Shown here: positions 13,428 through 62,874 of the stretch, piece after piece
How the letters are laid out: each line of letters begins with the position of its first letter
Numbering within the stretch: the first letter of the stretch is position 1
NCBI RefSeq assembly: GCF_006345805.1
Contig: NC_043006.1
Location: 101,680,001 to 101,744,000, forward strand
Direction: 5' to 3'
Length of the DNA: 64,000 nt
Source of the DNA: Octopus sinensis
Taxonomy: Eukaryota
Program-made: the position numbers and the translations under genes
Notes under the pieces: generated by a model
The model's input: only the letters and a program-made list of their open reading frames with translations
Database searches by the model: none
Told to the model about the DNA's origin: nothing

Positions 13428-13624
13428 ACATATTTCAAAATGTAACCACATGTGAATCATTGGCGATTTTCTTCCTCCGTCTTTCCTTCTTTTGGACTTT
13501 CCTCTGTTTCCAAAGAAGACCGTCTGCTCAAAACACTAAACCACCATTCTTTCCTTCCCTGAGTGTCTGCTAATACTTTATATGTACCACGTTCTCGCAT
13601 TTTTGTGTTCTTCTTTTTTAGATT

Positions 13625-13664
<40 letters not shown>

Positions 13665-13913
13665 ATATACATACACACACACACAGACACATACCACAGG
13701 CTTCTTTCAGTTTCCATTTACCCAATCCACTTACAAGACTTTGGACAGCCTGAGGTTATTGTAGAAGACACTTGCCCAAAGTGCCATGCAGTGGGACTGA
13801 ACCTGGAATCATGTGGTTGGGAAACAAACTTCTTACCACACAGTCATGCCTAAAACATTTTAAATAAATAAGCATTTACATTTGACAGAGTAAGCTGAAA
13901 GCCAAAGGATTAA
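13008..13913. mobile_element. MITE family 1 (13008-13176 plus 13852-13913) split by SINE A
   Basis: Start ttaaccttttg; the right half aataagcatttacatttgacagagtaagctgaaagccaaaggattaa matches other copies. Confidence 0.8.
13177..13851 (-). mobile_element. SINE A, full length, with a ~195-bp insert in its central microsatellite
   Basis: cttttacttgtttcagtcatt...gccatgctggagcac...gaagacacttgcccaa...cttaccacacag is colinear with the reverse complement of 17628-17987. Confidence 0.9.
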
Positions 13914-18449: not shown

Positions 18450-18618
18450 GGCTGGTGGGAGAGAGGCTATCCCTAGTACCCAGCTGGTACTCATTGCAAC
18501 GGAGTAAACTAGAACAACAACAAAGAAGTGCCTTGCTCAAAGATACAATCAGTCCAGGAATTGAACCAGTTACCTTATGATCATGAACTGAACACATTAA
18601 CTACTAGCTCATGTGCCT
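18450..18618 (-). mobile_element. SINE C (tRNA-type head), degenerate
   Basis: Reverse complement shows tagtagttaa...ggttcaattcctgg...ttgagcaaggcactt, homologous to 45555-45854 and 40002. Confidence 0.65.
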
Positions 18619-24100: not shown

Positions 24101-24314
24101 CTTTTCTTTTATTCTTTTACTTGTTTCAGTCATTTGACTGCAGCCATGCTGGAGCACTGCCTTTAGTTGAACAAATTGACTCTCGGACTTATTCTTTGTA
24201 AGCCTAGTACTTATTCTGTCAGTCTCTTTTGCCAAACTGCTAAAATACAGGGACATAAACACACCAACATCGGTTATCAAGGGGGGGGTGACAAACACAG
24301 ACACACAAATGTAT

Positions 24315-24369
<55 letters not shown>

Positions 24370-24516
24370 GCTTTTTTCAGTATCCATCTACCAAATCCAT
24401 TCACAAGGCTTTGGTTGGCCTGAGGCTAGAGTAGAAGACACTTGCCCAAGGTGCCATGCCATATAGCTGAACCCAGAACCATGTTGTTGGGAAGCAAGCT
24501 TCTTACCACGCAACCA
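24101..24516 (-). mobile_element. SINE A, full length
   Basis: Colinear with the 13177 and 17628 copies; central (TA)n. Confidence 0.9.
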
Positions 24517-32439: not shown

Positions 32440-32660
32440 ATCAAATGTTTGTGTTCACATAAGCTTACTCCTGCCATCAAATTGACATTACCTGTACAGG
32501 TGCGCAACATGCCACATGTCAGATGATGAATTGATTGTAGAGCAACATGAAATGACGTGTTTTGCTCATGAACACATTGTGAACACAGCACAACACCTCG
32601 TCTGGGAATCAAACCACGATTTTGTAATTGTGAGTGTGACACCCTAATCACTGAGCCATA
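32440..32660 (-). mobile_element. SINE C
   Basis: Reverse complement head tggctcagtgattagggtgtcacactcacaatt...ggtttgattcccaga; homologous to 45700-45854. Confidence 0.75.
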
Positions 32661-32671
32661 TTCCTTGACTC

Positions 32672-32707: not shown

Positions 32708-32748
<41 letters not shown>

Positions 32749-32965
32749 ATAATAATAATAATAATAATATAATAATAATAACAATAATAATAATAATAAT
32801 AATAATGATATTGATGATAATAATAATGATAATAATATTGATAATAATAATAATAATAATAATGATAATAATAATAATAATGATAATATAATAATGATAA
32901 TAATAATGATGATAATATAATAATAATAATGATAATAATAATAATAATAATAATTATAATAATAA
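32672..32965. repeat. (GT)n-(ACT)n-(AAT/GAT)n compound microsatellite
   Basis: Direct inspection. Confidence 0.95.
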
Positions 32966-35632
32966 TGAAAGAAATAAAGGAATTATTCTTTCATTTATTT
33001 ATATACCAGTAGAGAAAGTCTTCAAATTTTCAAATGAAATAAAATAAATTAAGATAGAAACATAATTACATTCAAGAATTTGTCAAGCACTTGAGAACGT
33101 GTATACTTCTGCTAAGGGTATGGTGCAAATTGAATAGTATATGGCAGTCGTGCGACTTTTTTAGGGCCATCTATGACAGTAATGTCAAGTTAAGTGCTCA
33201 TCAAAGTGCCATTTGATCAGAGAGGATTGGCACCGCTGATAAGTCAGTTTGGTTATGTGATAAGTGTGATGAAGTGCTGTTAGGTTTCTTAACTAATTTT
33301 GGTCGAGAATAGTGTTTACATTCTCATTTATTACATTACATCTTTTTCAAGGAGATCAAAGGGAACAGAATACATAGACAATAGGCTGAGCATGTCTCTT
33401 ATTACTATCATAGTTGACCCTAAAATGTCAGATTATTCAATTTGTATCGCCCCTTTGCAACCCTCATATGAGCCTACTTTTCTGTATATTAAGGAAATTG
33501 AACTTTCTACCTTTCGTAGATATATAACTATTCTCAATCGCTAGAAAGTTCTTAAATGTAATGACATAAATATGTTATTTTCATTTCATTTCCTTCGGAA
33601 ATTTGAATACTTTCAGAATGTGTATATAAAAACTTAATTTCTTCTGACTGGCATTAATTTTATTATTAATATACTATCTTGCTGGAGAGAGTCCATGTAA
33701 ATATACTATGGAATACTTGGCATAAGCCAGGCTGGAAAGTAGCTATAAATGGTCTGGAATGATTCTTCACGTAGGCATTTTCTGTGTACTAACACACTAT
33801 TAGATTTCTCTTGACAATTTATCTACTATGTAAGAAATAAAATTGTTTTTTCCACTATGTTCATAACAGTCTGGTGTGTAGTGCACTGTGTTGGAAGTTA
33901 CAGATCAATATTAATAGTATGTTTTGGGTTTTAATTATGTAATTGACATGTAACTAATTCAAGTATACAAAAAAGGTTTATTGTAAGTAAAAACAGTTTT
34001 ATTCTGTTTGAAACTATTATTGAACATAATATTTTATCTACTTTATGGATGAACCGTTTAATAACACACAAAGCTTTGAATATGCAGGACTGTGACTTTG
34101 TCGTTGGCACCATTTTACTGCAACTGTGTCAGTGATCATGCTGTAGTTGTGCAATGAAGATTTTGGTACATTGTGAAATAGATTTTAGTTTAAAAGGAAT
34201 TTAACAGCTTTGGGTATTACTAAATGACTAGAATGGCTGCTTCAGTTTTAACATGTGATCTCTGGTCAAATCACTTGCCAGACAAGTACAACTCTGAAAT
34301 ATTATTTTTTTTTATGATTTATTTTTAAAATTCTTTAATTTTTAAAATCATTTGAAAAATGAGTAGAAACAGGAGTGCTGGGAGATGAACCTCTTATGGA
34401 AATCAAATGATTTGTGGAAACTGGAGTGCCTGAAGGGAATCCACACATCCCAATATTGGAACTGCAAAACATGCAGCAATAAAGAAATGATATTAAGAAT
34501 TACACTGGATCCCAGCTTATATGATATTAGTTGTGTAACCATCATAGCCTTGGGAATTCTAAACACTCATGTCAGCATCTCTTGATAAAAAAATGTTTTT
34601 GGTTTTATCAGCAGAGATTATGGAGGATGTCTTCATAAATGTAGCCAAGAGCAAAGCAGGATCCTCAAAACATACTCCAGCAACATATATTTTTTGCATT
34701 TGGAATCTATTAACTGACATGGTAAATCTAAGGCCAACTTGGAAACTGAAGTTTTCTAAATCAAAAGGGTACAACTACTGGTATGAGTGGAATATTGAAT
34801 ATATTTGCATCCTCTCCGCTGGCATACTCAGTATGAATAGTAGTCACTATATTTTTGTGGTAGAAGGTTCTTATCCATTAATTTTGTAGTTGAAATAAAT
34901 TATACAGTAGTATTAAAAGGATTCCTTTTTTTTTCTTTTTTGGGCTGAAGGCTTTGTGGCAGCAAACCTAAAAGTTCCAAAGAATTTTAGAACTTCTGCT
35001 GATTAGTGAATTACTTTTTCCTGATCTATAGCAGTCTCTATTGATTTGTAGCTATATGCTTATATTCATACAGCTCTTGCAGCCTCTGTTGAACTATGCT
35101 GCCCTCTATGTCCAAAGGTGTACTCTTCTACTACCAAAGTAAAAAATCAATTTTGGGGAAATGCTCAAAAGCGGAGCTGCTGTTGTTGCATAATTCTCAA
35201 GAAAATTATGTGCTACATTTGTCTAATAAAAAAAAAGAGAAAAAGTAAAAATAATGAAATGAAATTAGAGGTAGCAAGTCATCTGAGGACCTATGGTAGG
35301 AATGCTATAGAAACTTGTTACAGGAATATGTCTCTATTGATAAATTAAGTTGATGCATGTGTGTGTGTGTATGTGTGTTAATGAGAGATTTGTAAACTGG
35401 ATAAAGCTATTTATTTTGCAAGTAGTTCTTGAAGTTTAGATATTGTGTGTAGTAATGTTCAACTTGAGTAGTTTTGTCATCTAAAGGTACGTTTTATACC
35501 TGAGAAGGAAGTGATATTGGTTTTGAGATTCTGTCGTTATATATTACATTCTTATTCATTGGGCAACTAAAAATATAACCAAGAATATGTAAATACATCT
35601 CATTCAAACTGAAAGAAATAAAATTGCAAGAA

Positions 35633-35641
35633 TTATTATTA

Positions 35642-35684
<43 letters not shown>

Positions 35685-35753
35685 CATCATCATTATCATT
35701 ATTGTTATCATCATCATCATCATCATCATTATTATTATTATTATTATTATCAT

Positions 35754-35785
<32 letters not shown>

Positions 35786-35840
35786 TTATTATTATTATTA
35801 TCATCATTATTATTATTATTATTATTATATTATTATTATA

Positions 35841-35871
<31 letters not shown>

Positions 35872-35902
35872 CATTATTATTATTATTATTATTATTATCA
35901 TT

Positions 35903-35933
<31 letters not shown>

Positions 35934-35974
35934 TTATCATTATTATTATTATTATTATTATCATTATTATTATT
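35633..35974. repeat. (ATT)n/(ATC)n microsatellite, ~340 bp
   Basis: Direct inspection; it explains the poly-I and poly-L ORFs. Confidence 0.95.
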
Positions 35975-37808: not shown

Positions 37809-40001
37809 GAGTGCATTTGTGTGGAAGTAAACTGTATCAAATGGACTGCACTTACTTTTGGGTGTCACTTTTAATCTGCTACAACATTTAACCCCAACTT
37901 CTTTCCCTTTGGGTATATTAGCTTACCATATCTCTGGCCTGCAGATAACTCGATTTGTTCAAACAGTTTTACTACTATAGGACACATGGTTTCTTCTTCT
38001 CTGTCCTTCTATTGTCTCAGAAAGTGGAAAGAAAGAGAGGAAGAACTTGCAAAAGGTTGTGTGAGTTGCCCTTCTCTTTCTAACTTAAACAATCAAAAAT
38101 GTTTTTTTTCGTTTAAAATCATGTATTTATGAAGAAAAATGTATCAATAAATCCAAGTTGGTACATTTCTACCCATCTATTATTCTGATATTTTTCTAAC
38201 CCATGTATTTTGAATATTCATAATAGCATAAAGATTTTGTCATACTCATTTATGTGTTAATGCGTCATCTAAATATAATAAAAGATTTAAAAGATAAGGG
38301 TTATGTGATCATGATGTTAATCTATTGACTTTATGATTATCATTTGAAACCTTACATTATATATTGTGTTCCTGAAGAAGGCATATGTTTAGCCAGTTTT
38401 ATTTTCTTCAGGTTATTTGGATGATGATAGGTTCCACTCCAAAAGCATAGATGTTTGTTCAGGAAAGAAAAGTAGTTTCAAAAATGTGTAAATGTTTAAA
38501 TACGGAATAATCATCCATACTGTGTTGTCCTAGGAGAATGGATGTTAAGCAGTAAATAGTAACCGGAATTCAGATATTTACTGAGTAAAAAGCATTCAAT
38601 TTAGAACAGTGTTTTACTGCTAAACCACTGTATTGCCTTTCATAGCCTTTAATGATTCTTGACTGAGGTTAAGAGATTTCTTATCTTACTTCTTTACCTC
38701 TGGAGTTGAACAACTTATGTGTGGTAGAATATGGAATGGAATAAACCTGGAAATATGGATCAATATAGGAACCAAAACAAAAGTACCTTGTTTGTTTGCA
38801 TATAATAATATATTCATTTATATATGTGTTTGTTAATTCTACTCTTTATCTCAAGTTTCCCTGGCAACATGGGGAGTGCAGTTGGATTCAATTTACATTT
38901 GAGATCTGGGACGAGGAATCCAATAAGAATGCAATATTAATGATATTTGGATAATTTTGTTTATATTTTTTGGCTTTTTAATAGTTGAATTTTTTCTTCT
39001 ATATACCATTAAAATGTGTAGAGTATCTATTGGTTATTGGAAATACTGATATTTTAACAGCCTCTCTCTCTCTCAATACACACATACACAGGCCACTCAC
39101 ATACACATAGATCTTGAAGTTGTAGTCATAGATTTTCTCTCTTTTTTTACCACTGTTTGTTTGCTAATACTTCCATCAGATAACATATCTCTATTTATTT
39201 AACTGTGTGTGTATGTGTATCCAGTTATATATATTTATATATATATATGTGTGTGTGTGTGTGCATGTTTGTATATAAATATTCATGTGTAGAAATGTAT
39301 GAAATGTACATGTTTTCTATGACACATCGAATTTTGCAAACAAGGAGAAATGTGAGTACTCAAAACGAGACATGGAGTTTTGTATTTATTAAAAACTGAC
39401 TTCGCTAATCATTACTCTGAGTTCGTGTTTTCAGTCAGAAATGTGAAACTTAGAATAACAGTTGATGACATTTTTAGATTCCTATATATTTATATGAGGG
39501 AGAGAGAGGATGAAAGTGAGGAAGACAGACACACACATAAACATGTACACACAATTGTATAGTCTGTGTATTATATTTATATATGTGTATTTGTGTATGT
39601 TTTTATGCATAGATGTAGTTGTATATATGTATGTGTATGCATGTATGTGTTTGAGTATGTATTTATTTTGTGTGCGTATAACTAGGTATATATGTACTTC
39701 TTTCTAAGGTATGTACATATATACATGTATATGTATGTATTGTCTTTTGGAAAGAAACTTTATCCAATCTATTGGATTGAGTTTAGTTACGTAGTCTTCT
39801 GCTTTTAATAATATTTTCAATATTTCAAGTAACATAGTTTGATTATTGCATTTTTGAGAAATATTGAAAATTTTTTTCTCTCGTGTTTTGCTATTTTATT
39901 GTTTGTAAATAAAATTTATTGGAATATTTCCTGTAAAGTTTCCTTGGGAATTTTCCTTTTTAAAATCCTTTTTCATTGTGTATTGCTGTTACATAAAGTA
40001 C

Positions 40002-40230
40002 AAGGCCTAGTGGTTAAGATGTTGAGCTCTCAGTGATCATGGGTTTGATTCCCAGACTAGGCTATGCATTGTGTATTTCAGCAAGACAAGTTTAATTAAA
40101 TGGAATGAGTACAAGCAGTAGCTTAAATTACAGTGGAATGGTATCTATCAAGCAGAAGAATCTTGCATTTTTAGTTGCATGTACACCTTGGAAAATAGAA
40201 TAAGCTCTGGCCCTATGATCTTCTAGATAT
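40002..40230 (+). mobile_element. SINE C, degenerate
   Basis: ggcctagtggttaag (A-box-like), gggtttgattccc (B-box-like). Confidence 0.6.
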
Positions 40231-40762: not shown

Positions 40763-42639
40763 TAATTTTGCATAACGCACATTTGTGTTTATAGGCAATC
40801 TTCACAGAAGGAAGGTTACCCATTACTGTTATAAGCATTATTGCATTGCTGAAAATAAGGTAATTAGTTTCCCTTGTGCTGTGCACATGACCATTTCTAA
40901 GCCTTCCTTTAACCATGAATATTTATTGAGTAAAAGTTATATTTCTGTTAGAATAGGGTGTGAATACAGAGTATTAACCTTCTCAAACAACCTGTCACAG
41001 TCACACTCATGATATGAAAAGCATCTTATCCCTGCTTACCTCATTAATTTTTGTCCTCTCTTTACTGATTTCTAGTATTTTTATATGGCAATATGGTCTA
41101 CAGGTCCTAAAATATCTTCTCTTTTTATTCAGGCCAAGAAAGATAAAAAAGATATTTATTGTCTGTTTCATATATATTGTCTTTGAAGATATTACATTGA
41201 AGATTACTCCAGTAACCTCAATGTTCTTTCTATATTTCCTCATCACATGCATTCACTTCTGCCTCTGGTTAAATACTTTGTTAGATATAAAATATGATCA
41301 AACTTCTTTTCATGACCTGGCTTTAATTCAATATCTTTTTCGAAACCCATGGCAAGTTATTCACTGATTCCTTTTCTTTCTCTTTTTCTCTTTCTTTTCC
41401 ATTCTGTATCGTTTGTCTTTTTCTCTTTTCTGCCTTTCCTCCCCATCCTCCTACAGCTTTGAATTTCACACTGGTTGACTTTGAGAATAAGACATACATA
41501 GATCTGTAAAAGCTGCAACTATGGAAGAATATAATGAAAATTAATTTTCTGAATAAAAGAGATTGGCAGGATAAATGGGAAATATGTATTGGATGCCAGA
41601 TAGCTGATTGCAAATTCATGTGTTCAAATTCTTTGACAGCCATTGTCTTCTGTTTCTGGTTAAGGCACTTTATTTCATTCAGTCAACTTAGTTGAAAATG
41701 GGTACTACTTCCACTTCACAGATGAGTGGTCAGTATTAGTAAAGTCTTCCTGGAGGTTAAAAACTAAGCAAAAACTGAGAATAAGCTCCAATAATCAATG
41801 CAGGAATGACAAAGTTACCAACTTTCAAAACTGCTGCTGCATAGTAAACAAGATTTAAAAACATTGAAAAAGCAAGAATGTAAAACTCAATAGCAATATT
41901 TTGTAGTTGCTGCACTGCATACACAGAGATCGCTTTTCTAGTTTTGATTTATTTGCTATAGGTTTTTTGACCCTGGATACTTCAATTTTTTAAAAAATTT
42001 TTTATTTTTATATTTCATCTTCATCTGTCTCTCTTTTCAGTGTATAACGTTTCTATTATTTAAAAAAAAAATCTTTTTAGTCTGAAGGGAGAGCAGTGTC
42101 TATGACCATTACAAGGTCTCCAAAAGAAAAAGTATTTGGTCGACTCAGAGATAGAGGGAGGAAGATATCCTTAGTCTGAAGACTTGACTCAAATGCTTTA
42201 AACAGAACAGATTCTGCTGAAAGCACCCAAGATACTAGATAAGGGTTATGAACTGACTAATAGATTACATTTTCCACCTAAATAGGCCATGGCAGGATTT
42301 GAACACAGAATGTCAAGTGCTGGTTCGAATTCCAATTCTGCCAATCCACTAACCTGATTTGGTACTTTATATTACCAACCTTGAAAACTTTACCTTGGCA
42401 AGAATTGAACACAGAATGTCAAAGCATTCCATCTGATGCTCTAATGATTCTGCCAATTCACAGCCTATCATATTATACTACTTTGCTTTACCCTTATGAA
42501 TGTGGTTTTATATTAAATGTTTGCTTGTTGTTACCTTGTTTTAAGCACCAAATTTTCTGCCAATAAATGTAAGGAAAATCCTCATATGTACATGTATAGT
42601 TTTGGAGACTTATATGTGGTAGTGAGAGAAAAGTTTCAT

Positions 42640-43255: not shown

Positions 43256-44032
43256 ATCTAGACTGACATTGCCAAAAAGAAAAAAGAAATTGATTTATAT
43301 GGTTTGCTTTTGTTATTTTAATAAATAAATTTAAAAGGTTTCAAAATTTAAACATCACGACTGAAAACTAAACTTTATGTCCAAAACTAAACTACTAGGA
43401 TAATTTAGAAAATTAATTTTTAAAAAATTTTCATATGTAAATTTTACTATTCTGATTAAGAACTAATACAATTATAACATTTTCACCATTAATACTGTAA
43501 CTTGTTTACATTTTCTCATTAAAAGTGTGTGTGTAAAGGTACATGTGACTAAATACTTTAAAGGTCTGTGAATATGTGCAAGTATTTTAAATGTTTTTGC
43601 ATAAATAAATACACACACACACACACTTCTTCCTTCAGGGTATTCTAACATTGTTGGGGTAAATATGATAAAACTATCTGTGATAACTTGCTCTGTTATT
43701 TAAAGTTCTTTTATTTGTCTTTTCATTATTGAAACAATGAATAATATCTTTTTCCAACATTAATAATGTTTGTTTGTTTTTCTTTTCTTTCAAAAATTGA
43801 AGTAACAAATTTATTTTCTGTTTTATGTTTATTAAACTTAATGCAATTATTATTACAGTTAGTCTTGTTGCATTATTATTATTGATGTAATAGCAGACAA
43901 AATGCCTGGTTTTGTTTGTTTAGTTAAAACACTTTCGATTCTGTGTTCATACCACCCTGAGGCTGAACTTTGCCTTTCACTCTTCTAAGACTTGTGAAAT
44001 AAGTAAGTAATGCAGTCAATATATGGAGTACG

Positions 44033-44215
44033 TAAGGCGGTGAACTGGCAGAACCATTGTACGTCTTGATGTTCAGAGTTCAAATTATGCCAAGGTTGAT
44101 TTTGCTTTTCAACCTTTTGGGGAGTCGATAAGTACCAGTTGAGCACTGGAGTTGATGTAATTGACATACTCCCTTCTCTTGAGCTTGCTAACCTTGTGCC
44201 AAAGTTTGAAACCAA
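44033..44215 (+). mobile_element. SINE B with an internal head deletion
   Basis: taaggcggtgaactggcagaaccattgtacgtcttgatgttcagagttcaaatt lacks the ~30 nt present in the 7863 copy. Confidence 0.8.
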
Positions 44216-44545: not shown

Positions 44546-45554
44546 AGGCAAAAACATTACTCTCCTAAATTAGTTAACTTCTACCCATCTCAGAAATTAT
44601 TATTATTATCATCATTAACATCCTTATTCTGATTTCAAACCCTGCTAAGGTTAACTTTACTTTTCATTCTTCCAGGAACAATAAAATAATTACCAATCAG
44701 TAACAGGGATTATTAAATTAACTGCGCCATCTCTGGCCTTGATCCAGTCATGTATATCCTTGTAGATCTTGGACCAATGATTGATAGAATCAGTAAAAAT
44801 TACTGTATTAAGTGTTGTATGTAGAAGTCTCTGAGCTCAAATCTTACCAGGATCAGTAATGAAAGTATGCAGAACCTATGCAGAATCATAATCTATGAAT
44901 ATATACATTTAATTATTTGATATCATGGATAAATAAAATAGAAATATAGTCTCATATATTAGTGATAACATCACTATACAATTATTAAGTTACAAAATAA
45001 TTTACAAACCACTAGACATTAATAATAACATTAAAGCATGTAAGGTGAAAACTGCGACATATATGCCCTCACACATCTTCACCAGTTTCTCTCTTTCTCT
45101 TTCCTTTTCCAACTGAGGTAGTCATGTATCTCCTCTAAGACATCTATTTCTATTCCTCTCTCAGTTGAAGGTGGGGGTGAGGATGGTTTCTTGCATTTTA
45201 TTTGGTTGTCCTGCTGGTGCTGGTGCTTTGTAAAAAGCTCTGAGGACACTATAAAGTGGTTGGCATTAGAAAGGTCATCCAGCAACAGAAACCACTAATT
45301 TAAATAACTAAGACCCTTCCTCTCAAATTTGCTGTGTAGATGTGAGAACTTAATGTTGGAGCAGGTATGACCTTATAGTTAAAAAGTCTACTTCATAATC
45401 ACATTACTCCACATCGGATTTGACAACATGGTGCTGTAAGGAAAATCTTGTCTAACACAGTCTTGGCCTATACCTTGTGGGTAAAATTTCATATACGGAA
45501 ATTGTGTCAAAGGTTGTCAGTTGTACTTGCGTGCATGTGTGCATGAGTATAGGG

Positions 45555-45854
45555 GGTAAAGACACCATGGGATTGCACCTAGAAACTTCCCCTCCAAGGC
45601 ACAAGTTGTTTATGTAAGACCAGCAGTCACCCACGCATACCAACCTGCCCTCTCCATGTCACCAATGTTAACCAAGGGAAAGGCAGGCCCACAGAACATG
45701 GCACTGGTGACTTCACAACTCATTTCTGCAGCTGAGTGAACTGGAACAACATGAAATAAAGTGTCTGACTCAAGAACACAACTCACAGCCTTGTCTGGGA
45801 ATAGAACTCACTACCTCATGATTGTGAGCCCGACGCTTTAACCACTGAGCCATG
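45555..45854 (-). mobile_element. SINE C, near full length (preceded by a degenerate SINE A head at ~45365-45545)
   Basis: Reverse complement head catggctcagtggttaaagcgtcgggctcacaatcatgaggtagtgagttctattccc. Confidence 0.8.
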
Positions 45855-45900
45855 AGTATATAATGTGTGTATATTTATACCAGCGTGAGGTGAGAACTGC

Positions 45901-48900
45901 TACATTTGAAGGGAAATGCCTTGTTTTATTGATGTTTTGACTGATTTAAGGTGGCAAGCTAGCAGAATCCATTCGTCTTTACATTTGAAGGGAAATGCCT
46001 TGTTTTATTGATGTTTTGACTGATTTAAGGTGGCAAGCTAGCAGAATCCATTCGTCTTTACATTTGAAGGGAAATGCCTTGTTTTATTGATGTTTTGACT
46101 GATTTAAGGTGGCAAGCTAGCAGAATCCATTCGTCTTTACATTTGAAGGGAAATGCCTTGTTTTATTGATGTTTTGACTGATTTAAGGTGGCAAGCTAGC
46201 AGAATCCATTCGTCTTTACATTTGAAGGGAAATGCCTTGTTTTATTGATGTTTTGACTGATTTAAGGTGGCAAGCTAGCAGAATCCATTCGTCTTTACAT
46301 TTGAAGGGAAATGCCTTGTTTTATTGATGTTTTGACTGATTTAGGTGGCAAGCTAGCAGAATCCATTTGTCTTTACATTTGAAGGGAAATGCCTTGTTTT
46401 ATTGATGTTTTGACTGATTTAAGGTGGCAAGCTAGCAGAATCCATTCGTCTTTACATTTGAAGGGAAATGCCTTGTTTTATTGATGTTTTGACTGATTTA
46501 AGGTGGCAAGCTAGCAGAATCCATTCGTCTTTACATTTGAAGGGAAATGCCTTGTTTTATTGATGTTTTGACTGATTTAAGGTGGCAAGCTAGCAGAATC
46601 CATTTGTCTTTACATTTGAAGGGAAATGCCTTGTTTTATTGATGTTTTGACTGATTTAAGGTGGCAAGCTAGCAGAATCCATTCGTCTTTACATTTGAAG
46701 GGAAATGCCTTGTTTTATTGATGTTTTGACTGATTTAAGGTGGCAAGCTAGCAGAATCCATTCGTCTTTACATTTGAAGGGAAATGCCTTGTTTTATTGA
46801 TGTTTTGACTGATTTAAGGTGGCAAGCTAGCAGAATCCATTCGTCTTTACATTTGAAGGGAAATGCCTTGTTTTATTGATGTTTTGACTGATTTAAGGTG
46901 GCAAGCTAGCAGAATCCATTTGTCTTTACATTTGAAGGGAAATGCCTTGTTTTATTGATGTTTTGACTGATTTAAGGTGGCAAGCTAGCAGAATCCATTT
47001 GTCTTTACATTTGAAGGGAAATGCCTTGTTTTATTGATGTTTTGACTGATTTAAGGTGGCAAGCTAGCAGAATCCATTCGTCTTTACATTTGAAGGGAAA
47101 TGCCTTGTTTTATTGATGTTTTGACTGATTTAAGGTGGCAAGCTAGCAGAATCCATTCGTCTTTACATTTGAAGGAAATGCCTTGTTTTATTGATGTTTT
47201 GACTGATTTAAGGTGGCAAGCTAGCAGAATCCATTCGTCTTTACATTTGAAGGGAAATGCCTTGTTTTATTGATGTTTTGACTGATTTAAGGTGGCAAGC
47301 TAGCAGAATCCATTTGTCTTTACATTTGAAGGGAAATGCCTTGTTTTATTGATGTTTTGACTGATTTAAGGTGGCAAGCTAGCAGAATCCATTGTCTTTA
47401 CATTTGAAGGGAAATGCCTTGTTTTATTGATGTTTTGACTGATTTAAGGTGGCAAGCTAGCAGAATCCATTCGTCTTTACATTTGAAGGGAAATGCCTTG
47501 TTTTATTGATGTTTTGACTGATTTAAGGTGGCAAGCTAGCAGAATCCATTCGTCTTTACATTTGAAGGGAAATGCCTTGTTTTATTGATGTTTTGACTGA
47601 TTTAAGGTGGCAAGCTAGCAGAATCCATTCGTCTTTACATTTGAAGGGAAATGCCTTGTTTTATTGATGTTTTGACTGATTTAAGGTGGCAAGCTAGCAG
47701 AATCCATTGTCTTTACATTTGAAGGGAAATGCCTTGTTTTATTGATGTTTTGACTGATTTAAGGTGGCAAGCTAGCAGAATCCATTCGTCTTTACATTTG
47801 AAGGGAAATGCCTTGTTTTATTGATGTTTTGACAGATTTAAGGTGGCAAGCTAGCAGAATCCATTCGTCTTTACATTTGAAGGGAAATGCCTTGTTTTAT
47901 TGATGTTTTGACTGATTTAAGGTGGCAAGCTAGCAGAATCCATTCGTCTTTACATTTGAAGGGAAATGCCTTGTTTTATTGATGTTTTGACTGATTTAAG
48001 GTGGCAAGCTAGCAGAATCCATTCGTCTTTACATTTGAAGGGAAATGCCTTGTTTTATTGATGTTTTGACTGATTTAAGGTGGCAAGCTAGCAGAATCCA
48101 TTTGTCTTTACATTTGAAGGGAAATGCCTTGTTTTATTGATGTTTTGACTGATTTAAGGTGGCAAGCTAGCAGAATCCATTTGTCTTTACATTTGAAGGG
48201 AAATGCCTTGTTTTATTGATGTTTTGACTGATTTAAGGTGGCAAGCTAGCAGAATCCATTCGTCTTTACATTTGAAGGGAAATGCCTTGTTTTATTGATG
48301 TTTTGACTGATTTAAGGTGGCAAGCTAGCAGAATCCATTTGTCTTTACATTTGAAGGGAAATGCCTTGTTTTATTGATGTTTTGACTGATTTAAGGTGGC
48401 AAGCTAGCAGAATCCATTTGTCTTTACATTTGAAGGGAAATGCCTTGTTTTATTGATGTTTTGACTGATTAAGGTGGCAAGCTAGCAGAATCCATTGTCT
48501 TTACATTTGAAGGAAATGCCTTGTTTTATTGATGTTTTGACTGATTTAGGTGGCAAGCTAGCAGAATCCATTGTCTTTACATTTGAAGGGAATGCCTTGT
48601 TTTATTGATGTTTTGACTGATTTAAGGTGGCAAGCTAGCAGAATCCATTTGTCTTTACATTTGAAGGGAAATGCCTTGTTTTATTGATGTTTTGACTGAT
48701 TTAAGGTGGCAAGCTAGCAGAATCCATTCGTCTTTACATTTGAAGGGAAATGCCTTGTTTTATTGATGTTTTGACTGATTTAAGGTGGCAAGCTAGCAGA
48801 ATCCATTCGTCTTTACATTTGAAGGGAAATGCCTTGTTTTATTGATGTTTTGACTGATTTAAGGTGGCAAGCTAGCAGAATCCATTCGTCTTTACATTTG

Positions 48901-51900
48901 AAGGGAAATGCCTTGTTTTATTGATGTTTTGACTGATTTAAGGTGGCAAGCTAGCAGAATCCATTCGTCTTTACATTTGAAGGGAAATGCCTTGTTTTAT
49001 TGATGTTTTGACTGATTTAAGGTGGCAAGCTAGCAGAATCCATTTGTCTTTACATTTGAAGGGAAATGCCTTGTTTTATTGATGTTTTGACTGATTTAAG
49101 GTGGCAAGCTAGCAGAATCCATTTGTCTTTACATTTGAAGGGAAATGCCTTGTTTTATTGATGTTTTGACTGATTTAAGGTGGCAAGCTAGCAGAATCCA
49201 TTCGTCTTTACATTTGAAGGGAAATGCCTTGTTTTATTGATGTTTTGACTGATTTAAGGTGGCAAGCTAGCAGAATCCATTCGTCTTTACATTTGAAGGG
49301 AAATGCCTTGTTTTATTGATGTTTTGACTGATTTAAGGTGGCAAGCTAGCAGAATCCATTTGTCTTTACATTTGAAGGGAAATGCCTTGTTTTATTGATG
49401 TTTTGACTGATTTAAGGTGGCAAGCTAGCAGAATCCATTGTCTTTACATTTGAAGGGAAATGCCTTGTTTTATTGATGTTTTGACTGATTTAAGGTGGCA
49501 AGCTAGCAGAATCCATTCGTCTTTACATTTGAAGGGAAATGCCTTGTTTTATTGATGTTTTGACTGATTTAAGGTGGCAAGCTAGCAGAATCCATTCGTC
49601 TTTACATTTGAAGGGAAATGCCTTGTTTTATTGATGTTTTGACTGATTTAAGGTGGCAAGCTAGCAGAATCCATTTGTCTTTACATTTGAAGGGAAATGC
49701 CTTGTTTTATTGATGTTTTGACTGATTTAAGGTGGCAAGCTAGCAGAATCCATTCGTCTTTACATTTGAAGGGAAATGCCTTGTTTTATTGATGTTTTGA
49801 CTGATTTAAGGTGGCAAGCTAGCAGAATCCATTTGTCTTTACATTTGAAGGGAAATGCCTTGTTTTATTGATGTTTTGACTGATTTAAGGTGGCAAGCTA
49901 GCAGAATCCATTTGTCTTTACATTTGAAGGGAAATGCCTTGTTTTATTGATGTTTTGACTGATTTAAGGTGGCAAGCTAGCAGAATCCATTCGTCTTACA
50001 TTTGAAGGGAAATGCCTTGTTTTATTGATGTTTTGACTGATTTAAGGTGGCAAGCTAGCAGAATCCATTTGTCTTTACATTTGAAGGGAAATGCCTTGTT
50101 TTATTGATGTTTTGACTGATTTAAGGTGGCAAGCTAGCAGAATCCATTTGTCTTTACATTTGAAGGGAAATGCCTTGTTTTATTGATGTTTTGACTGATT
50201 TAAGGTGGCAAGCTAGCAGAATCCATTTGTCTTTACATTTGAAGGGAAATGCCTTGTTTTATTGATGTTTTGACTGATTTAAGGTGGCAAGCTAGCAGAA
50301 TCCATTCGTCTTTACATTTGAAGGGAAATGCCTTGTTTTATTGATGTTTTGACTGATTTAAGGTGGCAAGCTAGCAGAATCCATTGTCTTTACATTTGAA
50401 GGGAAATGCCTTGTTTTATTGATGTTTTGACTGATTTAAGGTGGCAAGCTAGCAGAATCCATTTGTCTTTACATTTGAAGGGAAATGCCTGTTTTATTGA
50501 TGTTTTGACTGATTTAAGGTGGCAAGCTAGCAGAATCCATTCGTCTTTACATTTGAAGGGAAATGCCTTGTTTTATTGATGTTTTGACTGATTTAAGGTG
50601 GCAAGCTAGCAGAATCCATTTGTCTTTACATTTGAAGGGAAATGCCTTGTTTTATTGATGTTTTGACTGATTTAAGGTGGCAAGCTAGCAGAATCCATTT
50701 GTCTTTACATTTGAAGGGAAATGCCTTGTTTTATTGATGTTTTGACTGATTTAAGGTGGCAAGCTAGCAGAATCCATTCGTCTTTACATTTGAAGGGAAA
50801 TGCCTTGTTTTATTGATGTTTTGACTGATTTAAGGTGGCAAGCTAGCAGAATCCATTCGTCTTTACATTTGAAGGGAAATGCCTTGTTTTATTGATGTTT
50901 TGACTGATTTAAGGTGGCAAGCTAGCAGAATCCATTTGTCTTTACATTTGAAGGGAAATGCCTTGTTTTATTGATGTTTTGACTGATTTAAGGTGGCAAG
51001 CTAGCAGAATCCATTTGTCTTTACATTTGAAGGGAAATGCCTGTTTTATTGATGTTTTGACTGATTTAAGGTGGCAAGCTAGCAGAATCCATTCGTCTTT
51101 ACATTTGAAGGGAAATGCCTTGTTTTATTGATGTTTTGACTGATTTAAGGTGGCAAGCTAGCAGAATCCATTCGTCTTTACATTTGAAGGGAAATGCCTT
51201 GTTTTATTGATGTTTTGACTGATTTAAGGTGGCAAGCTAGCAGAATCCATTCGTCTTTACATTTGAAGGGAAATGCCTTGTTTTATTGATGTTTTGACTG
51301 ATTTAAGGTGGCAAGCTAGCAGAATCCATTCGTCTTTACATTTGAAGGGAAATGCCTTGTTTTATTGATGTTTTGACTGATTTAAGGTGGCAAGCTAGCA
51401 GAATCCATTCGTCTTTACATTTGAAGGGAAATGCCTTGTTTTATTGATGTTTTGACTGATTTAAGGTGGCAAGCTAGCAGAATCCATTCGTCTTTACATT
51501 TGAAGGGAAATGCCTTGTTTTATTGATGTTTTGACTGATTTAAGGTGGCAAGCTAGCAGAATCCATTCGTCTTTACATTTGAAGGGAAATGCCTTGTTTT
51601 ATTGATGTTTTGACTGATTTAAGGTGGCAAGCTAGCAGAATCCATTCGTCTTTACATTTGAAGGGAAATGCCTTGTTTTATTGATGTTTTGACTGATTTA
51701 AGGTGGCAAGCTAGCAGAATCCATTCGTCTTTACATTTGAAGGGAAATGCCTTGTTTTATTGATGTTTTGACTGATTTAAGGTGGCAAGCTAGCAGAATC
51801 CATTCGTCTTTACATTTGAAGGGAAATGCCTTGTTTTATTGATGTTTTGACTGATTTAAGGTGGCAAGCTAGCAGAATCCATTCGTCTTTACATTTGAAG

Positions 51901-52370
51901 GGAAATGCCTTGTTTTATTGATGTTTTGACTGATTTAAGGTGGCAAGCTAGCAGAATCCATTCGTCTTTACATTTGAAGGGAAATGCCTTGTTTTATTGA
52001 TGTTTTGACTGATTTAAGGTGGCAAGCTAGCAGAATCCATTTGTCTTTACATTTGAAGGGAAATGCCTTGTTTTATTGATGTTTTGACTGATTTAAGGTG
52101 GCAAGCTAGCAGAATCCATTTGTCTTTACATTTGAAGGAAATGCCTTGTTTTATTGATGTTTTGACTGATTTAAGGTGGCAAGCTAGCAGAATCCATTTG
52201 TCTTTACATTTGAAGGGAAATGCCTTGTTTTATTGATGTTTTGACTGATTTAAGGTGGCAAGCTAGCAGAATCCATTTGTCTTTACATTTGAAGGGAAAT
52301 GCCTTGTTTTATTGATGTTTTGACTGATTTAAGGTGGCAAGCTAGCAGAATCCATTCGTCTTTACATTTG
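45901..52370. repeat. Satellite/minisatellite array: 82 x 79 bp plus 8 nt
   Basis: Unit tacatttgaagggaaatgccttgttttattgatgttttgactgatttaaggtggcaagctagcagaatccattcgtctt. Hand count of 82 units; 82x79+8 minus 16 observed 1-nt deletions = 6470, the observed span. Confidence 0.97.
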
Positions 52371-52502
52371 TGAGGTCAAATTCCGCCAAAGTTGACTTTG
52401 CTTTTTATTTCTACAGACTCAATAAAAAAATATCAGTAGAGCACTGGGGTCAACATCATTGATCTCTCCATTCCTCAAAAATTTGCTGGCCTTGTGCCAA
52501 GG
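52331..52502 (+). mobile_element. SINE B whose head forms the last array unit
   Basis: aaggtggcaagctagcagaatc...tttacatttgtgaggtcaaattccgccaaagttgactttgc...gagcactggggtc...gctggccttgtgccaag is colinear with 7863-8069 and 44033-44215. Confidence 0.85.
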
Positions 52503-52794
52503 TAAGAATGTTAATGGTTGATTGGGTTATTTCCCTTTATATCAATTTTCACTTAGCATTTTGTATCATAGGAAAATGATAAATTATGATAATTAAGACT
52601 TTGTAGGGTCTTTTAATATCAATCCGTTAAATACTTAGGGTTGATATAAAGCAATCCCATGATATAACCAAGTGCACCAAAATGTTCCAAAATTAGGTAT
52701 CTATATTATTGTTTTTGCTATTATTATTAGTTTCATTGTTATCTTTACTATTATTATTATTGTTATTACTATTTTTATTGTGTTTATTCTTAGA

Positions 52795-53215
52795 GCAGTG
52801 GATTTGCAGAATTATTAGAGCATTGGAGAAAAAGCTGTGTGATATTTGTTCCAGCACTTGATATTTTAAGTTCAAACCATGCTCCCCTTCAACTTTGCCT
52901 TTTATCCTTTTGAGGTTGATAAAATAAGTGCCAATTGAACACTGGAGTTGGTATAATTGACTTGAATCACCACCCTTAAAACTGCTACCTTTATGTCAAA
53001 AGTTGAGACCATTTTTATTTTTAAGGTTGTGGATTTGCAGAACTGTTGGAACATTGGAAACTTCTAACTCTTTACATTCTGAATTCAAATATAGCTTTGG
53101 TCAGTTTTACCTTCTGTCCTTCTGAGAACTACAGAAATAAGTACTTGTTCAGTACCGAAATCAATAGTATCAACTAATACGTTTTCCTCCAAATTTCTGG
53201 TCTTGTGCTTAATGA
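52795..53215 (+). mobile_element. Two tandem degenerate SINE B copies (~52795-52995 and ~53020-53215)
   Basis: Each has gatttgcagaa...ttcaaa...ctttg/ttttac...aataagt. Confidence 0.65.
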
Positions 53216-59312: not shown

Positions 59313-61040
59313 ATTACGAACGAGGAGAATGAATGGGATCAGAAGGTGGAGGTTGCTGTGGAGAGGGTTAGTCTGGAAGAAGTAGTGGAGGCAATGAAGG
59401 AAATGAAAACAGGAAAGGTGGCTGGTCCATCAGAAGTAAGTGTGGAAATGGTAACTGCAAGTGGAGAGATAGGGATTGTGGAGATGATGGAGCACTGCCA
59501 GGGTGTGCTGGAAGGAAGAGGGACGCCAGATGATTGGGCACTAAGTGTGGTGGTACCGATCTTCAAGGGGAAAGGGGATGTGATGGGTTGTGGAGCGTAT
59601 AGGGGAGTGAAGTTATTGGAGCATGCAATGAAGATAGCGGCAAGGGTGTTGGAGAGGAGAATTCGGAAAGGGGTGGATGTGGATGAGATGCAATTTGGTT
59701 TTATGCAAGGAAGGGGACTAAAGATGCAGTGTTCGTTGTAAGTAGATTATAAGAATATCGAGATAAGGAGAAGGAGTTATACATGTATTTTGTTGATCTA
59801 GAGAAGGCATTTGATAGGGTTCCAAGGAAGGTGATTGAGTGGGCATTGAAGAAGAGAGTAAGTTCTTGAGATAATAGTGAGGGCAGTGATAAGTTTGAAT
59901 GAGGGGGTAAAGATGAGAGTTAGAATTGGATCAGAGCTGTCGGAGGAATTTGTGGGGAAAGTTAGTGTGCATCAGGGATCTGTGTTGTCACCGTTGTTTG
60001 CAATATTGGTTGATGTGATGACGGAGAGTGCAAGAGAGGGATTGATAATGGAGATACTATATGCAGAAGACCTTGTTCTGATGAGTGAGATGATGGAGGG
60101 ATTGAGGGAGAAGTTTTGGAAATAGAAAGAGGCATTTGAAAGCAGGGGTTTGAAGGTAAATCTCAGGAAGACAAAGGTGATAGTGAGCAGGATGGAAGGA
60201 GAAGTGTTAGCAAGTAAGGTGGATCCATGTGGTGTATGTGGGAGGTGGGTAATGGCAAATACAGCTTTGTGTACGAGATGTGAGAAATGGATTCATGGTA
60301 GGTGTATGAAAATGAAGAAGGTAACCCCAAAACTGGCAAGAGAGTTTGTGTAAGGAAGGTGTGAGAAAGGAGCTGGAGGGCTGGTAAAACTATTAGAAAT
60401 GCTATGTGACGAGGTGGAAATGGTGAAAGGGTTTTGTTATTTGGGAAATAGGACGGATGTAAGTGGTAGATGTGAAGCAGCTGTGACAGCAAGAGCAAGA
60501 CTTGGCTGGGTGAAGTTCAGGGAATGTGGAGTATTGTTAGGTAGGAAAAGGTGCTCATTGAAGATGAAAGGAAGGGTCTATAGGAGTTGCGTGAGAGCAG
60601 CAATGCTGTATGGGAGTTAGACATGGTGTTTAAGGGAAAGAGAGATGGCAATTTTGAGAAGGACCGAGAGTGCAATGGTGAGAGAAATGTGTGGAGTGAA
60701 GTTGTTTGATGAGATAAAGACTAAGGACTTCATAGGGATGCTGGGGCTGGAGGAATTGGTGGAACAGCTTGCAAGGGCAAATGGAATTGAGAAGGGATAA
60801 GGAGCATGTGCTGAGGAGAGTGCTTGAGTTTGAGGTAAATGGACTGAGAAAGTGAGGTAGACTGAGAAAATGTGTAGGGAACAGTTGTAAGAGAAGATTG
60901 GGGGGAGGGGCTTGAGAAGGGAGGATGCCCAAAACAGGGCAAGATGGTGTGAGAGCATTTGCTATGGCATTGAAGTAGATCCAGCCACCCCTGTTTATGG
61001 GGACAAAACACTGATTTAAAACATGGGATGACTGACTGAC
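59313..61040 (+). mobile_element. 5'-truncated, decayed RTE-clade LINE ORF2 (reverse transcriptase), with frameshifts and stops
   Basis: MKTGKVAGP, DW..SVVVPIFKGKGD, YRGVKLLEHAMK, QFGFMQGRG, FVDLEKAFDRVPR, VHQGSVLSPL, LYAEDL (the catalytic YADD is decayed), F.YLG, MLYGS; 3' end ccagccacccctgtttatgggg and a (GACT)n tail. Confidence 0.92.
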
Positions 61041-61599: not shown

Positions 61600-61978
61600 C
61601 TGCCTGCAGAATTGTTAGCATGCCAAACAAAATGCTTAGCAGCATTTCATCCACCTTACATTCTGAGTTCAAATTCTACCTATGTTGACTTTGTCTTTCA
61701 TCTTTTTAGGGTCAATAAAAATAAAAACCAAGTAAGTGCAGGGATCATCATAATCAACTTGCCCTCTCTCACAAAATTTCAGGCCTTGTGCCTATAGCTG
61801 AACAAATTATTATTGTTGTTGTTGTTGTCATTAATGTAAGGTAGTGAGCTTGTAGAATCATAAGCATGCTGGGCAAAATGCTTTGTGGCATTTTGTCCAT
61901 CTTTATGTTCTGAATTCAAATTCCACCATAGTTGACTTGCCTGTTGTCCTTTAGGGGTCAATAAATTAAGTACCAGTG
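61600..61978 (+). mobile_element. Two tandem SINE B copies (~61600-61795 and ~61836-61978)
   Basis: gcagaattgttagcatgcc..caaaatgcttagcagcatttc...gagttcaaattc, and a second similar copy. Confidence 0.8.
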
Positions 61979-62400
61979 AAAGAAGACCTGGCAAGCCAAG
62001 TGAGATCGTAGCCATGACCTATGCCAGTGTCACATAACCATCCCATTTAAGAGTACCCTTCAATCAATGGGCAATATGCTGTGCTTGAGAAGACCTGTTG
62101 AATTAAGTGAAATCATTGTCATGGCTGGTGCCAGTACCACCTAACTGGCACCCATGCCAGTGGCATGTAAAAAGCACCATTCGAACGTGGTCGGTGCCAG
62201 TCCCACTGGACTGGCTCCTGTGCTAATGGCACGTAAACTCTTGCCCAGTACACTCTTGGAGTGGTTGGCATTAGGAAGGGTATCCAGCTGTAGAAACCAT
62301 GTCAGATCAGATTGAAGCCTGGTGCATATCCTGGCTTTGCCAGTCCTCAGTCAAACCGTCCATCCCATGCCAGTATGGGAAGCAGATGTTAAAGGATGAC
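61979..62400 (+). mobile_element. RTE LINE 3' UTR fragment
   Basis: gaagacctggcaagccaagtgag...ggttggcattaggaagggtatccagc...ttaaaggatgac. Confidence 0.75.
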
Positions 62401-62874
62401 GAAACACTAGTGTCGGTGTAATTGACTAGTCCCCTCCTCCAAAATTTCAAGCCTTCTACCTTTAGTAGAAAGGATTATTATCATTATTATTAGAATCATT
62501 GAAGCACTGGAAAAAATGCTTTATGGTATTTGTTGTGCTTTGAGTTTAAATCCCATTGAAACCAACTTTGCCCTTCATCCTTTTGGAGTCAGTTATTGGG
62601 GTTGATTGTACTGACTAACCATCATCTTCCAAATTTCTGGTCTTGTGCCTGTATTAGAATCAGTAATATTATTCCTTTTATGTTTCTTGTTTTACATCTC
62701 ATAGAGTCAGGTTCAAATAAATCCCTCAGTTGTACTCAAGGAAGATACTTGATTGACAGCACTCTCTATAATATGTGGGTTGTTTCCAACAGGGAATTCT
62801 TCTGGACTATGTACATATTGATGTTACGTGGGATTCAGTTTGTTAATTTTTCCGTTCGCTTTTCCATGAGTCCT

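What the first reader, a model, noticed from the sequence alone, without database searches (positions are those of the whole stretch)
45901..52370. Satellite caught at birth: 79-bp SINE-head/flank junction amplified 82 times between 8-bp direct repeats
Seen: each unit is about 47 nt of non-SINE DNA plus the first ~32-40 nt of SINE B, and the SINE body continues after the last unit. The array equals n x 79 + 8 because TACATTTG marks both boundaries (gaactgc|tacatttg and tacatttg|tgagg). Apart from the CpG site I see one substitution (gacaga near 47834) in 6.47 kb, whereas the host SINE is visibly diverged from its relatives. Inference: a single-copy ancestral allele flanked by 8-bp microhomology was duplicated by slippage, or excised as a circle and rolling-circle amplified, very recently or under strong homogenisation. 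The pre-amplification allele can be written down exactly. TE-derived satellites are known in general; whether this one is described I cannot check.
Basis: partly seen in the sequence, partly recalled or inferred. Interest (0 to 1): 0.8.

Follow-up and report, generated by a model that had tools for sequence, protein, structure and literature searches.

The report
Young minisatellite at an octopus SINE junction
A 79-bp piece of DNA spanning the edge of an old octopus SINE has been copied 82 times in a row at one spot; it is a clean but ordinary example of a transposon-derived minisatellite, not a demonstrated new satellite.

Summary
The array is real and sits exactly at 45901-52370: 82 head-to-tail units of 79 bp plus an 8-bp partial unit. 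Each unit is 47 nt of non-SINE flank plus the first 32 nt of a tRNA-type octopod SINE. The SINE body continues in register after the last unit. Collapsing the array to one unit restores a normal short-head SINE, like the independent copy at 44034-44204.

The host SINE is about 20% diverged from the family consensus. So the length is not exactly n x 79 + 8. Nearly all of this variation is of the type that long-read consensus errors produce, so the true array may be even more uniform.

Best explanation: in-place tandem amplification of a SINE 5'-junction segment. It was probably seeded between two TACATTTG repeats and grew by out-of-register exchange or slippage, long after the SINE inserted.

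This is the known Haber-Louis / Jurka-Gentles type of TE-derived minisatellite. "Satellite at birth" and rolling-circle origin are unsupported. I could not test spread elsewhere in the genome, read support or orthologous alleles. Interest is low to moderate.

The parts
45480..45857 (-). Unrelated SINE of another family (head CTCATGGCTCAGTGGTTAAAGCG...), pointing away from the array. Context only.
   Evidence: nhmmer finds 3 more copies in the window; sequence read
45858..45900 (+). Unique 43-nt spacer upstream of the array, ending ...GTGAGGTGAGAACTGC
   Evidence: No similarity to the unit or to other parts of the window. The GTGAGGT match to the downstream flank is not significant.
45901..52362 (+). 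82 full units of the 79-bp repeat TACATTTGAAGGGAAATGCCTTGTTTTATTGATGTTTTGACTGATTT|AAGGTGGCAAGCTAGCAGAATCCATT(C/T)GTCTT. Positions 1-47 are flank-derived and positions 48-79 are the SINE head.
52363..52370 (+). Terminal 8-bp partial unit TACATTTG. It is also SINE sequence (family consensus TA(C/T)ATTC-TG) and matches the first 8 bp of the array (45901-45908).
52284..52330 (+). Flank-derived 47 nt of the last unit. In the one-unit ancestral allele this is the DNA immediately 5' of the SINE.
52331..52530 (+). Host SINE. Its head is in the last unit, its body runs to 52502 by profile, and its tail reaches about 52530 by eye. It is a short-head variant lacking about 35 nt (the A-box-like region). 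The B-box-like GAGGTCAAATTCC lies at 52372-52384, outside the repeat.
47834..47834 (+). The only substitution outside the CpG: T>A in unit 25 (GACTGA>GACAGA).
48425..48655 (+). Units 33-35, which carry 6 of the 16 single-base deletions. This looks like a stretch of low consensus quality.

Best explanation
This is a single-locus, TE-derived minisatellite (VNTR) in an octopod genome.

An old tRNA-type SINE of a short-head variant inserted here long ago. Much later, a 79-bp segment was duplicated in place. The segment consists of the 47 nt of DNA just 5' of the SINE plus the first 32 nt of the SINE. The duplication was most likely seeded by mispairing between two TACATTTG octamers 79 bp apart, one in the flank and one in the SINE, through replication slippage or unequal exchange (the Haber-Louis / Taylor-Breden models).

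Once two or more copies existed, out-of-register sister-chromatid or allelic exchange, slippage or repair synthesis grew the array to about 82 copies and kept it uniform.

The array has no reading frame, no notable fold and no Pol III promoter box, so it is probably neutral.

Most of the residual variation (C/T and C-loss at the sole CpG, and one-base losses in homopolymers) is probably long-read consensus error at a methylated CpG and in base runs. Alternatively, the C/T pattern is a real two-variant interspersion of the kind seen in minisatellites.

Shown: the structure, the junction composition, the in-register flanks and the age contrast.
Inferred: the seeding mechanism, the growth mechanism, neutrality, and the technical origin of the variants.
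For: - Array and units.
- The SINE 5' end falls at unit position 48. Six full-length copies start at AAGG after unrelated flanks, and the head matches 17 of 22 bases to copy 61838 and 16-17 of about 22 to copy 44034.
- The alignment of the last unit plus downstream DNA to the independent short-head copy at 44034-44204 runs straight across the array boundary.
- The first 47 nt are not SINE-like and occur nowhere else in the window.
- The terminal TACATTTG aligns to the SINE consensus TAYATTC-TG.
- Age contrast: the SINE is about 20% from consensus, against 1 substitution in 82 x 77 non-CpG sites. With the octopus clock quoted in PMC13282606 (JC 0.09 = 25 My, 0.2 = 56 My), the SINE is about 56 My old. 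A star-like unit ancestry is about 0.04 My old (Poisson 95% about 0.001-0.25 My).
- The edge units are perfect, which argues against an old array that is homogenised only in its interior.
- There is no ORF, the DNA fold z-score is +0.76, and the B-box lies outside the unit.
- Independent CpG decay is excluded. T at 34 of 82 CpGs against 1 of 6314 other sites is a ratio of about 2600-fold.
- The error signature is 16 deletions, 0 insertions and 1 substitution, all deletions in base runs, 6 of them at the CpG itself and 6 in three adjacent units. Nanopore consensus errors concentrate in 5mC motifs and homopolymers (PMC6591954). At least one octopus reference assembly is ONT R9.4.1 (PMC10700109). 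CpG o/e is 0.21 in the window, which implies germline methylation.
- Precedent: 300 human TE-derived tandem repeats are flanked by 5-20 bp direct repeats, mostly 7 bp (PMC3389668).
Against: - No reads, no second individual and no orthologous locus could be examined. The copy number, and even the uniformity, could be shaped by assembly or polishing.
- The 8-bp boundary repeat is a by-product of any array with a partial last unit. It does not prove microhomology-mediated seeding.
- No target-site duplication of the SINE could be found to prove that the 47 nt is the original insertion flank.
- The unit could not be searched in the host genome, so 'single locus' holds only for these 64 kb.
- The sequencing platform of this window is unknown, so the technical reading of the C/T mosaic is an inference.
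Confidence: 0.7

Rival explanations
1. The 79-bp unit belongs to an older, multi-locus repeat. It would be either a dispersed satellite or the internal VNTR of a composite mobile element (SVA-like: repeat block plus SINE part). In that case the 47-nt half is element sequence, not local flank.
For: The host genome could not be searched. The metagenome and prokaryote-genome scans were empty, but they do not contain the SINE either, so they say nothing. No target-site duplication was found to pin the SINE's original flank. TE-borne tandem repeats are common in molluscs (PMC12628747).
Against: There is no second copy of either half of the unit in 57 kb of surrounding repeat-rich DNA, nor in 20 kb of O. 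bimaculoides DNA that does carry the SINE. The SINE 5' end falls exactly where other copies start. The array boundaries are sharp and in register with unique flanks.
Confidence: 0.12
2. Rolling-circle origin. The 79-bp segment was excised as a small circle through the 8-bp repeats, copied by rolling-circle replication, and the concatemer recombined back into the locus.
For: The very high uniformity of the units would follow from a single template. The 8-bp repeats could mediate excision.
Against: The array lies exactly in register between its own ancestral flanks. That requires homologous re-entry at the source locus and adds a step with no supporting evidence. If real, the C/T interspersion is not expected from a single template. 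No circle data are available.
Confidence: 0.08
3. Assembly artefact. The array, or most of its length and uniformity, was produced by long-read assembly or polishing rather than being present in the animal.
For: Sixteen homopolymer deletions, and substitutions confined to the CpG, show that this stretch is an imperfectly polished long-read consensus. Polishing with multi-mapping short reads can erase real differences between units.
Against: A 6.5-kb array is within the reach of single long reads. The boundaries are clean and join unique flanks colinearly. Assemblers more often collapse than invent such arrays (my own knowledge).
Confidence: 0.07
4. An old array kept uniform by concerted evolution. 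The first duplication would date from near the time of SINE insertion, for example triggered at the endonuclease site at the SINE 5' end, with continuous homogenisation since.
For: Partial-Alu duplications at the 5' end of Alu have been ascribed to the retrotransposition nick site (PMC3389668). The unit's SINE head is itself about 25% from the family consensus, as expected if the unit evolved along with the SINE.
Against: The edge units, which escape homogenisation in old arrays, are identical to the majority unit. There are no degenerate units at either boundary.
Confidence: 0.1

Closest known systems
Alu-derived and other TE-derived human minisatellites flanked by short direct repeats (Jurka & Gentles 2006; Ahmed & Liang 2012, PMC3389668)
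   Same: The tandem array is built from part of a SINE in place, next to the rest of the element. It is bounded by a 5-20 bp direct repeat (mostly 7 bp in human; 8 bp here). Unit and array sizes are in the minisatellite range.
   Different: Here the unit straddles the SINE/flank junction: 47 nt is not TE. Copy number is high (82; most human cases have 2 units). The host is an octopod.
Models of minisatellite birth: Haber & Louis 1998 (a segment flanked by 5-10 bp direct repeats duplicated by slippage or unequal exchange) and Taylor & Breden 2000 (slipped-strand mispairing at non-contiguous repeats, leaving an incomplete terminal unit), as summarised in PMC3389668
   Same: An 8-bp repeat lies at both boundaries, the terminal unit is incomplete, and the single-copy progenitor can be reconstructed.
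   Different: The mechanism is inferred from the end product only. No progenitor allele was observed.
SINE-derived satellites and VNTRs: Hydromantes Hy/Pol III, Xenopus satellite 1, and the mouse B1-derived unstable VNTR (table in PMC9659126)
   Same: The tRNA-related or 5' part of a SINE is turned into a tandem repeat.
   Different: Those are multi-locus or abundant families, or short-motif VNTRs. This is one 6.5-kb locus whose unit is mostly flank, and the Pol III boxes are not in the unit.
Mollusc TE-associated satellites (oyster Cg170/HindIII, BIV160 in pearl/Helitron-type elements; PMC12628747)
   Same: A mollusc genome in which tandem repeats are physically joined to a TE on one side.
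   Different: In those, the repeats are internal parts of DNA transposons and are spread with them. Here a retroposon junction was amplified in place.
SVA (SINE-VNTR-Alu) composite retrotransposons
   Same: A VNTR block lies next to SINE-derived sequence.
   Different: SVA is a mobile, multi-copy family with target-site duplications and a poly(A) tail. None of these was found here.

Membership tests
TE-derived minisatellite seeded at short direct repeats | Head-to-tail units of about 10-100 bp forming an array of about 0.5-30 kb | tested here: met
   79-bp unit, 82.1 copies, 6470 bp
TE-derived minisatellite seeded at short direct repeats | The unit contains part of a TE copy that continues colinearly outside the array | tested here: met
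   Unit positions 48-79 are the SINE head. The body continues at 52363-52502. The alignment to copy 44034-44204 crosses the boundary.
TE-derived minisatellite seeded at short direct repeats | A direct repeat of 5-20 bp at the two array boundaries, or an incomplete terminal unit | tested here: met
   TACATTTG at 45901-45908 and 52363-52370. Whether it predates the array can only be inferred from the SINE consensus.
TE-derived minisatellite seeded at short direct repeats | Single locus: the unit is not dispersed in the genome | not testable with these tools
   The unit is absent from the rest of the window and from 20 kb of O. bimaculoides.
TE-derived minisatellite seeded at short direct repeats | Copy-number variation between individuals, and a one-unit allele in relatives | not testable with these tools
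   No reads, no population data and no orthologous locus were available.
Classical satellite DNA | Very long arrays (tens of kb to Mb), usually at several chromosomal sites and a measurable fraction of the genome | tested here: not met
   The array is 6.5 kb with both ends inside the window. Abundance elsewhere is not testable.
Composite VNTR-bearing retrotransposon (SVA-like) | Several dispersed copies sharing the repeat block, bounded by target-site duplications | tested here: inconclusive
   No other copy in the window and no target-site duplication detected. The genome-wide search was not possible.
tRNA-derived SINE (host element) | Pol III A and B boxes in a tRNA-related 5' part, many dispersed diverged copies, and a defined 5' end | tested here: met
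   About 18 copies in the window, with a common start at AAGG. The consensus has an A-box-like TTAGAGCACTGG and a B-box-like GAGTTCAAATCCTGC (box assignment is by eye). This copy lacks the A-box region. ARAGORN and Rfam find nothing, as expected for degenerate SINE heads. The family is also present in O. bimaculoides.
Rolling-circle / eccDNA-derived array | Evidence of circular intermediates, or of array insertion away from the source locus | not testable with these tools
   The array is in register at its presumed source locus, which does not call for a circle.

The most novel reading that the evidence does not exclude
The array is truly nascent: absent or one unit long in sister species that split 2.5 My ago, hypervariable within the species, and already seeding copies elsewhere. 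Alternatively, it is the VNTR of a so far undescribed SVA-like composite retroelement of octopods. Either would give a dated, fully reconstructable start of a satellite family in a clade for which I found no satellite DNA description.
Probability: 0.07. Interest if true: 0.6.

Novelty: new member of a known kind. Interest (0 to 1): 0.25.

Why it matters
The array is a tidy case of how a minisatellite starts. The progenitor sequence, the two 8-bp repeats and the old SINE that supplied one of them are all readable. The age gap between element and array is about two orders of magnitude or more.

My literature searches found no description of tandem repeats of this class in octopods. The locus could therefore serve as a VNTR marker or as a test case for array dynamics in cephalopods.

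It also carries a practical warning. In long-read assemblies, the variation inside perfect arrays (CpG C/T and homopolymer length) may be technical and should not be read as history.

It does not change what is known about the origin of satellites.

Tried and rejected
- **Whole unit SINE-derived.** I looked for an internal SINE duplication. The best match of the 47-nt half to the SINE consensus (AAATGCCTTGTTTTATT versus AAATGCTTTGTGGTATT) is reached by 41 of 500 shuffles. Rejected.
- **5'-truncated SINE.** nhmmer prefers to align the SINE part of the unit to an internal SINE region rather than to the head. I rejected this in favour of the true 5' end. The unit carries the family's terminal AAGGTGG, and copy 44034 has the same short-head layout.
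- **Target-site duplication of the host SINE.** None was detectable.
- **GTGAGGT 7-mer upstream and at the 3' boundary.** Not significant: 26% of shuffles match as well.
- **Higher-order repeat structure in the C/T pattern.** No periodicity. Clustering is only weak (runs z = -1.8; longest C run of 12, p about 0.03).
- **Independent CpG decay as the source of the C/T mosaic.** Rejected on the rate ratio.
- **Coding or structural role.** There are stops in all frames and the fold is no better than shuffles.
- **Unit in public collections.** There are 0 hits in metagenome and prokaryote-genome contigs. The control with the SINE core also gave 0, so these negatives carry no weight.
- **Reaching the host genome or orthologous locus by exact ORF look-up.** Four window ORFs are not on record.
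- **Loci fetched through the LINE RT homologues.** Only the O. bimaculoides locus carries the SINE. The ENA loci L001, L003 and L004 do not.
- **Rfam and ARAGORN.** No hits.
- **Paper search for the SINE core sequence.** No hit.
- **Pfam scan of all window ORFs to find a host exon.** Considered, but not run beyond six ORFs because the expected yield was low.
Full report
**1. What is there**

Tandem Repeats Finder reports a single large array at 45901-52370: period 79, 82.1 copies, 99% matches, score 12625. No other long-period array exists in the 64-kb window. Splitting on the octamer TACATTTG gives 82 full units and a terminal 8-bp partial unit.

The upstream boundary reads ...GTGAGGTGAGAACTGC|TACATTTGAAGGG. 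The downstream boundary reads ...CATTCGTCTT|TACATTTG|TGAGGTCAAATTCC. Both halves of the unit occur only inside the array, with 76 and 79 matches against 0 expected from shuffles.

**2. Variation among units**

- 43 units are identical to TACATTTGAAGGGAAATGCCTTGTTTTATTGATGTTTTGACTGATTTAAGGTGGCAAGCTAGCAGAATCCATTCGTCTT.
- 25 units differ only by C>T at the single CpG.
- There is one further substitution: T>A at 47834, in unit 25.
All lie in runs of identical bases (GGG, AAA, TT, TTT, AA), there are no insertions, six are at the CpG site itself (ATT-GTC), and six fall in the three adjacent units 33-35.

Only 69 units are 79 bp long. The array length is 82 x 79 + 8 - 16, not n x 79 + 8.

Counting ATT-GTC as T-type, the CpG site is C in 48 units and T in 34. 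The order is close to random, with weak clustering (runs test z = -1.8; a run of 12 C, p about 0.03) and no periodicity. The first five units and the last unit are the C type and are perfect. C is the ancestral state, because the SINE consensus has CG at this position.

**3. The SINE**

A profile built from the window finds about 18 copies of one SINE family. Its consensus begins AAGGTAGTGGATTGGCAGAATCATTAGAGCACTGG... and contains a B-box-like GAGTTCAAATCCTGC. Six full-length copies begin at AAGG[T/C][A/G]G directly after unrelated flanks, which fixes the 5' end of the element.

In the array unit, the same start (AAGGTGG...) is at position 48. The terminal TACATTTG aligns with the SINE consensus TA(C/T)ATTC-TG, and the SINE body runs on to 52502, with a tail to about 52530.

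This copy lacks about 35 nt, the A-box-like region, relative to full-length copies. An independent copy at 44034-44204 has the same short-head layout. The alignment of 'last unit + downstream' to that copy crosses the array boundary without a break. Collapsing the array to one unit therefore restores an ordinary SINE. This is the strongest support for in-place amplification.

The 47-nt half is not significantly similar to the SINE (41 of 500 shuffles). It is not found elsewhere in the window. No target-site duplication could be recognised.

**4. Host**

The window is rich in SINEs and microsatellites, with GC 33% and CpG o/e 0.21. A decayed non-LTR reverse transcriptase at 59346-60500 has its best relative in Octopus bimaculoides at 76% identity. 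A fetched O. bimaculoides locus carries the same SINE family, whereas three ENA loci with related LINEs do not.

The window therefore comes from an octopod. Because a 6.5-kb perfect array is assembled, it comes from a long-read assembly. The species could not be fixed, since four exact-ORF look-ups were not on record.

**5. Age**

The host SINE is 65-76% identical to other copies and about 80% identical to the window consensus. A recent O. vulgaris repeat study equates JC 0.09 with 25 My and JC 0.2 with 56 My (PMC13282606). On that clock:

- The SINE belongs to the old burst, at about 56 My.
- The array has 1 substitution in 82 x 77 = 6314 non-CpG sites. For a star-like ancestry, that gives about 0.04 My (Poisson 95% roughly 0.001-0.25 My).
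- The two perfect edge units alone bound the age at a few My.

These figures assume that the consensus is accurate.

**6. The C/T mosaic**

If the 34 T's were independent CpG decay events, the CpG would have mutated about 2600 times faster than other sites (34/82 against 1/6314). At a CpG transition excess of 10-15 fold (a mammalian figure, from my own knowledge), about 10 My would be needed, and some 200 other substitutions would be expected. One is seen. Independent decay is therefore excluded. Two readings remain.

- (a) Technical. All variation except one base is either a homopolymer deletion or lies at the sole CpG. These are the two classes in which nanopore consensus errors concentrate (PMC6591954). 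The current O. vulgaris reference was built from ONT R9.4.1 reads called with Guppy 5 (PMC10700109). CpG o/e of 0.21 shows that this DNA is germline-methylated. Mixing of two haplotypes in a collapsed consensus is a related possibility.
- (b) Biological. One early C>T was followed by repeated out-of-register exchange or conversion that interspersed the two variants. Human minisatellite variant-repeat maps show such patterns (my own knowledge).

I favour (a) for the deletions and cannot decide for C/T.

**7. Mechanism**

The array lies in register between its own ancestral flanks. Growth in place is therefore the simplest account.

Seeding by mispairing between the two TACATTTG copies 79 bp apart fits both published models of minisatellite birth. 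One model has a segment flanked by 5-10 bp direct repeats; the other predicts an incomplete terminal unit. Both are summarised in PMC3389668. Six of the eight bases of the downstream copy are SINE consensus, so the repeat plausibly predates the array. Even so, any array ending in a partial unit shows such a repeat, so this step is an inference.

Expansion by unequal exchange, slippage or repair synthesis is also inferred. A rolling-circle origin is not excluded, but it needs an extra homologous re-entry step and has no evidence.

The array has no open frame and no fold better than shuffles. It does not include the SINE's B box. No function is indicated.

**8. Comparison with what is known**

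- About a fifth of human mini- and satellites derive from TEs. Of these, 300 are flanked by 5-20 bp direct repeats, mostly 7 bp. Alu-derived minisatellites of this kind were described by Jurka and Gentles. Partial-Alu duplications at the Alu 5' end are also recorded (PMC3389668).
- SINE-derived satellites and VNTRs are listed for salamander, Xenopus and mouse. TE-linked satellites are well known in bivalves (PMC9659126, PMC12628747).
- By unit and array size, this locus is a minisatellite rather than a satellite.
- What is specific here is the junction-spanning unit, the high copy number, the near-perfect identity and the host clade. I found no satellite or minisatellite description for octopods.

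**9. Limits**

The unit search in public collections was empty. The SINE core was absent there too, so those negatives mean nothing. I could not test read support, genome-wide copy number, population variation or orthologous alleles. These are the decisive checks.

**10. Verdict**

The feature is a young, in-place amplified SINE-junction minisatellite of a known kind. Interest 0.25.

Noticed in passing
window 43885-44204, 52793-53211, 61604-61979, 62399-62652, 42280-42466: Copies of the same SINE family repeatedly sit head-to-tail within 10-40 nt of each other. This suggests preferential insertion into the microsatellite-like tail of an older copy.
   Followed up: no
window 59346-60500 (+): A decayed non-LTR retrotransposon fragment (RVT_1 plus a PHD-like zinc finger) with several in-frame stops. 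Its best relative is O. bimaculoides LOC106880826 at 76% identity.
   Followed up: partly
window 45480-45857 (-); also 32508-32665 (-), 18489-18615 (-), 40000-40126 (+): A second, unrelated SINE family with a tRNA-like head (CTCATGGCTCAGTGGTTAAAGCG). One copy lies 43 nt upstream of the array and points away from it.
   Followed up: partly
whole window outside the array: Strong CpG depletion (o/e 0.21) with TpG/CpA excess (1.3) at 33% GC. This implies long-term germline methylation of this repeat-rich region.
   Followed up: partly
window 48425-48655 (units 33-35): Six of the 16 single-base deletions cluster in three adjacent units. This looks like a local dip in consensus quality of the assembly.
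   Followed up: partly
window 6106-6651, 32747-32966, 35632-35974: Very long microsatellites: (TA)n of about 273 copies, (TAA)n of about 74 copies and (ATT)n of about 115 copies.
   Followed up: no
window 13563-13853, 17662-17997, 24167-24466: Three ORFs share the peptide ...SVSIYQIHSQGFG.PEA.VEDTCP.CHA(V/I)... (two continue GLN.E.CGW). This marks a third dispersed repeat family in the window.
   Followed up: no
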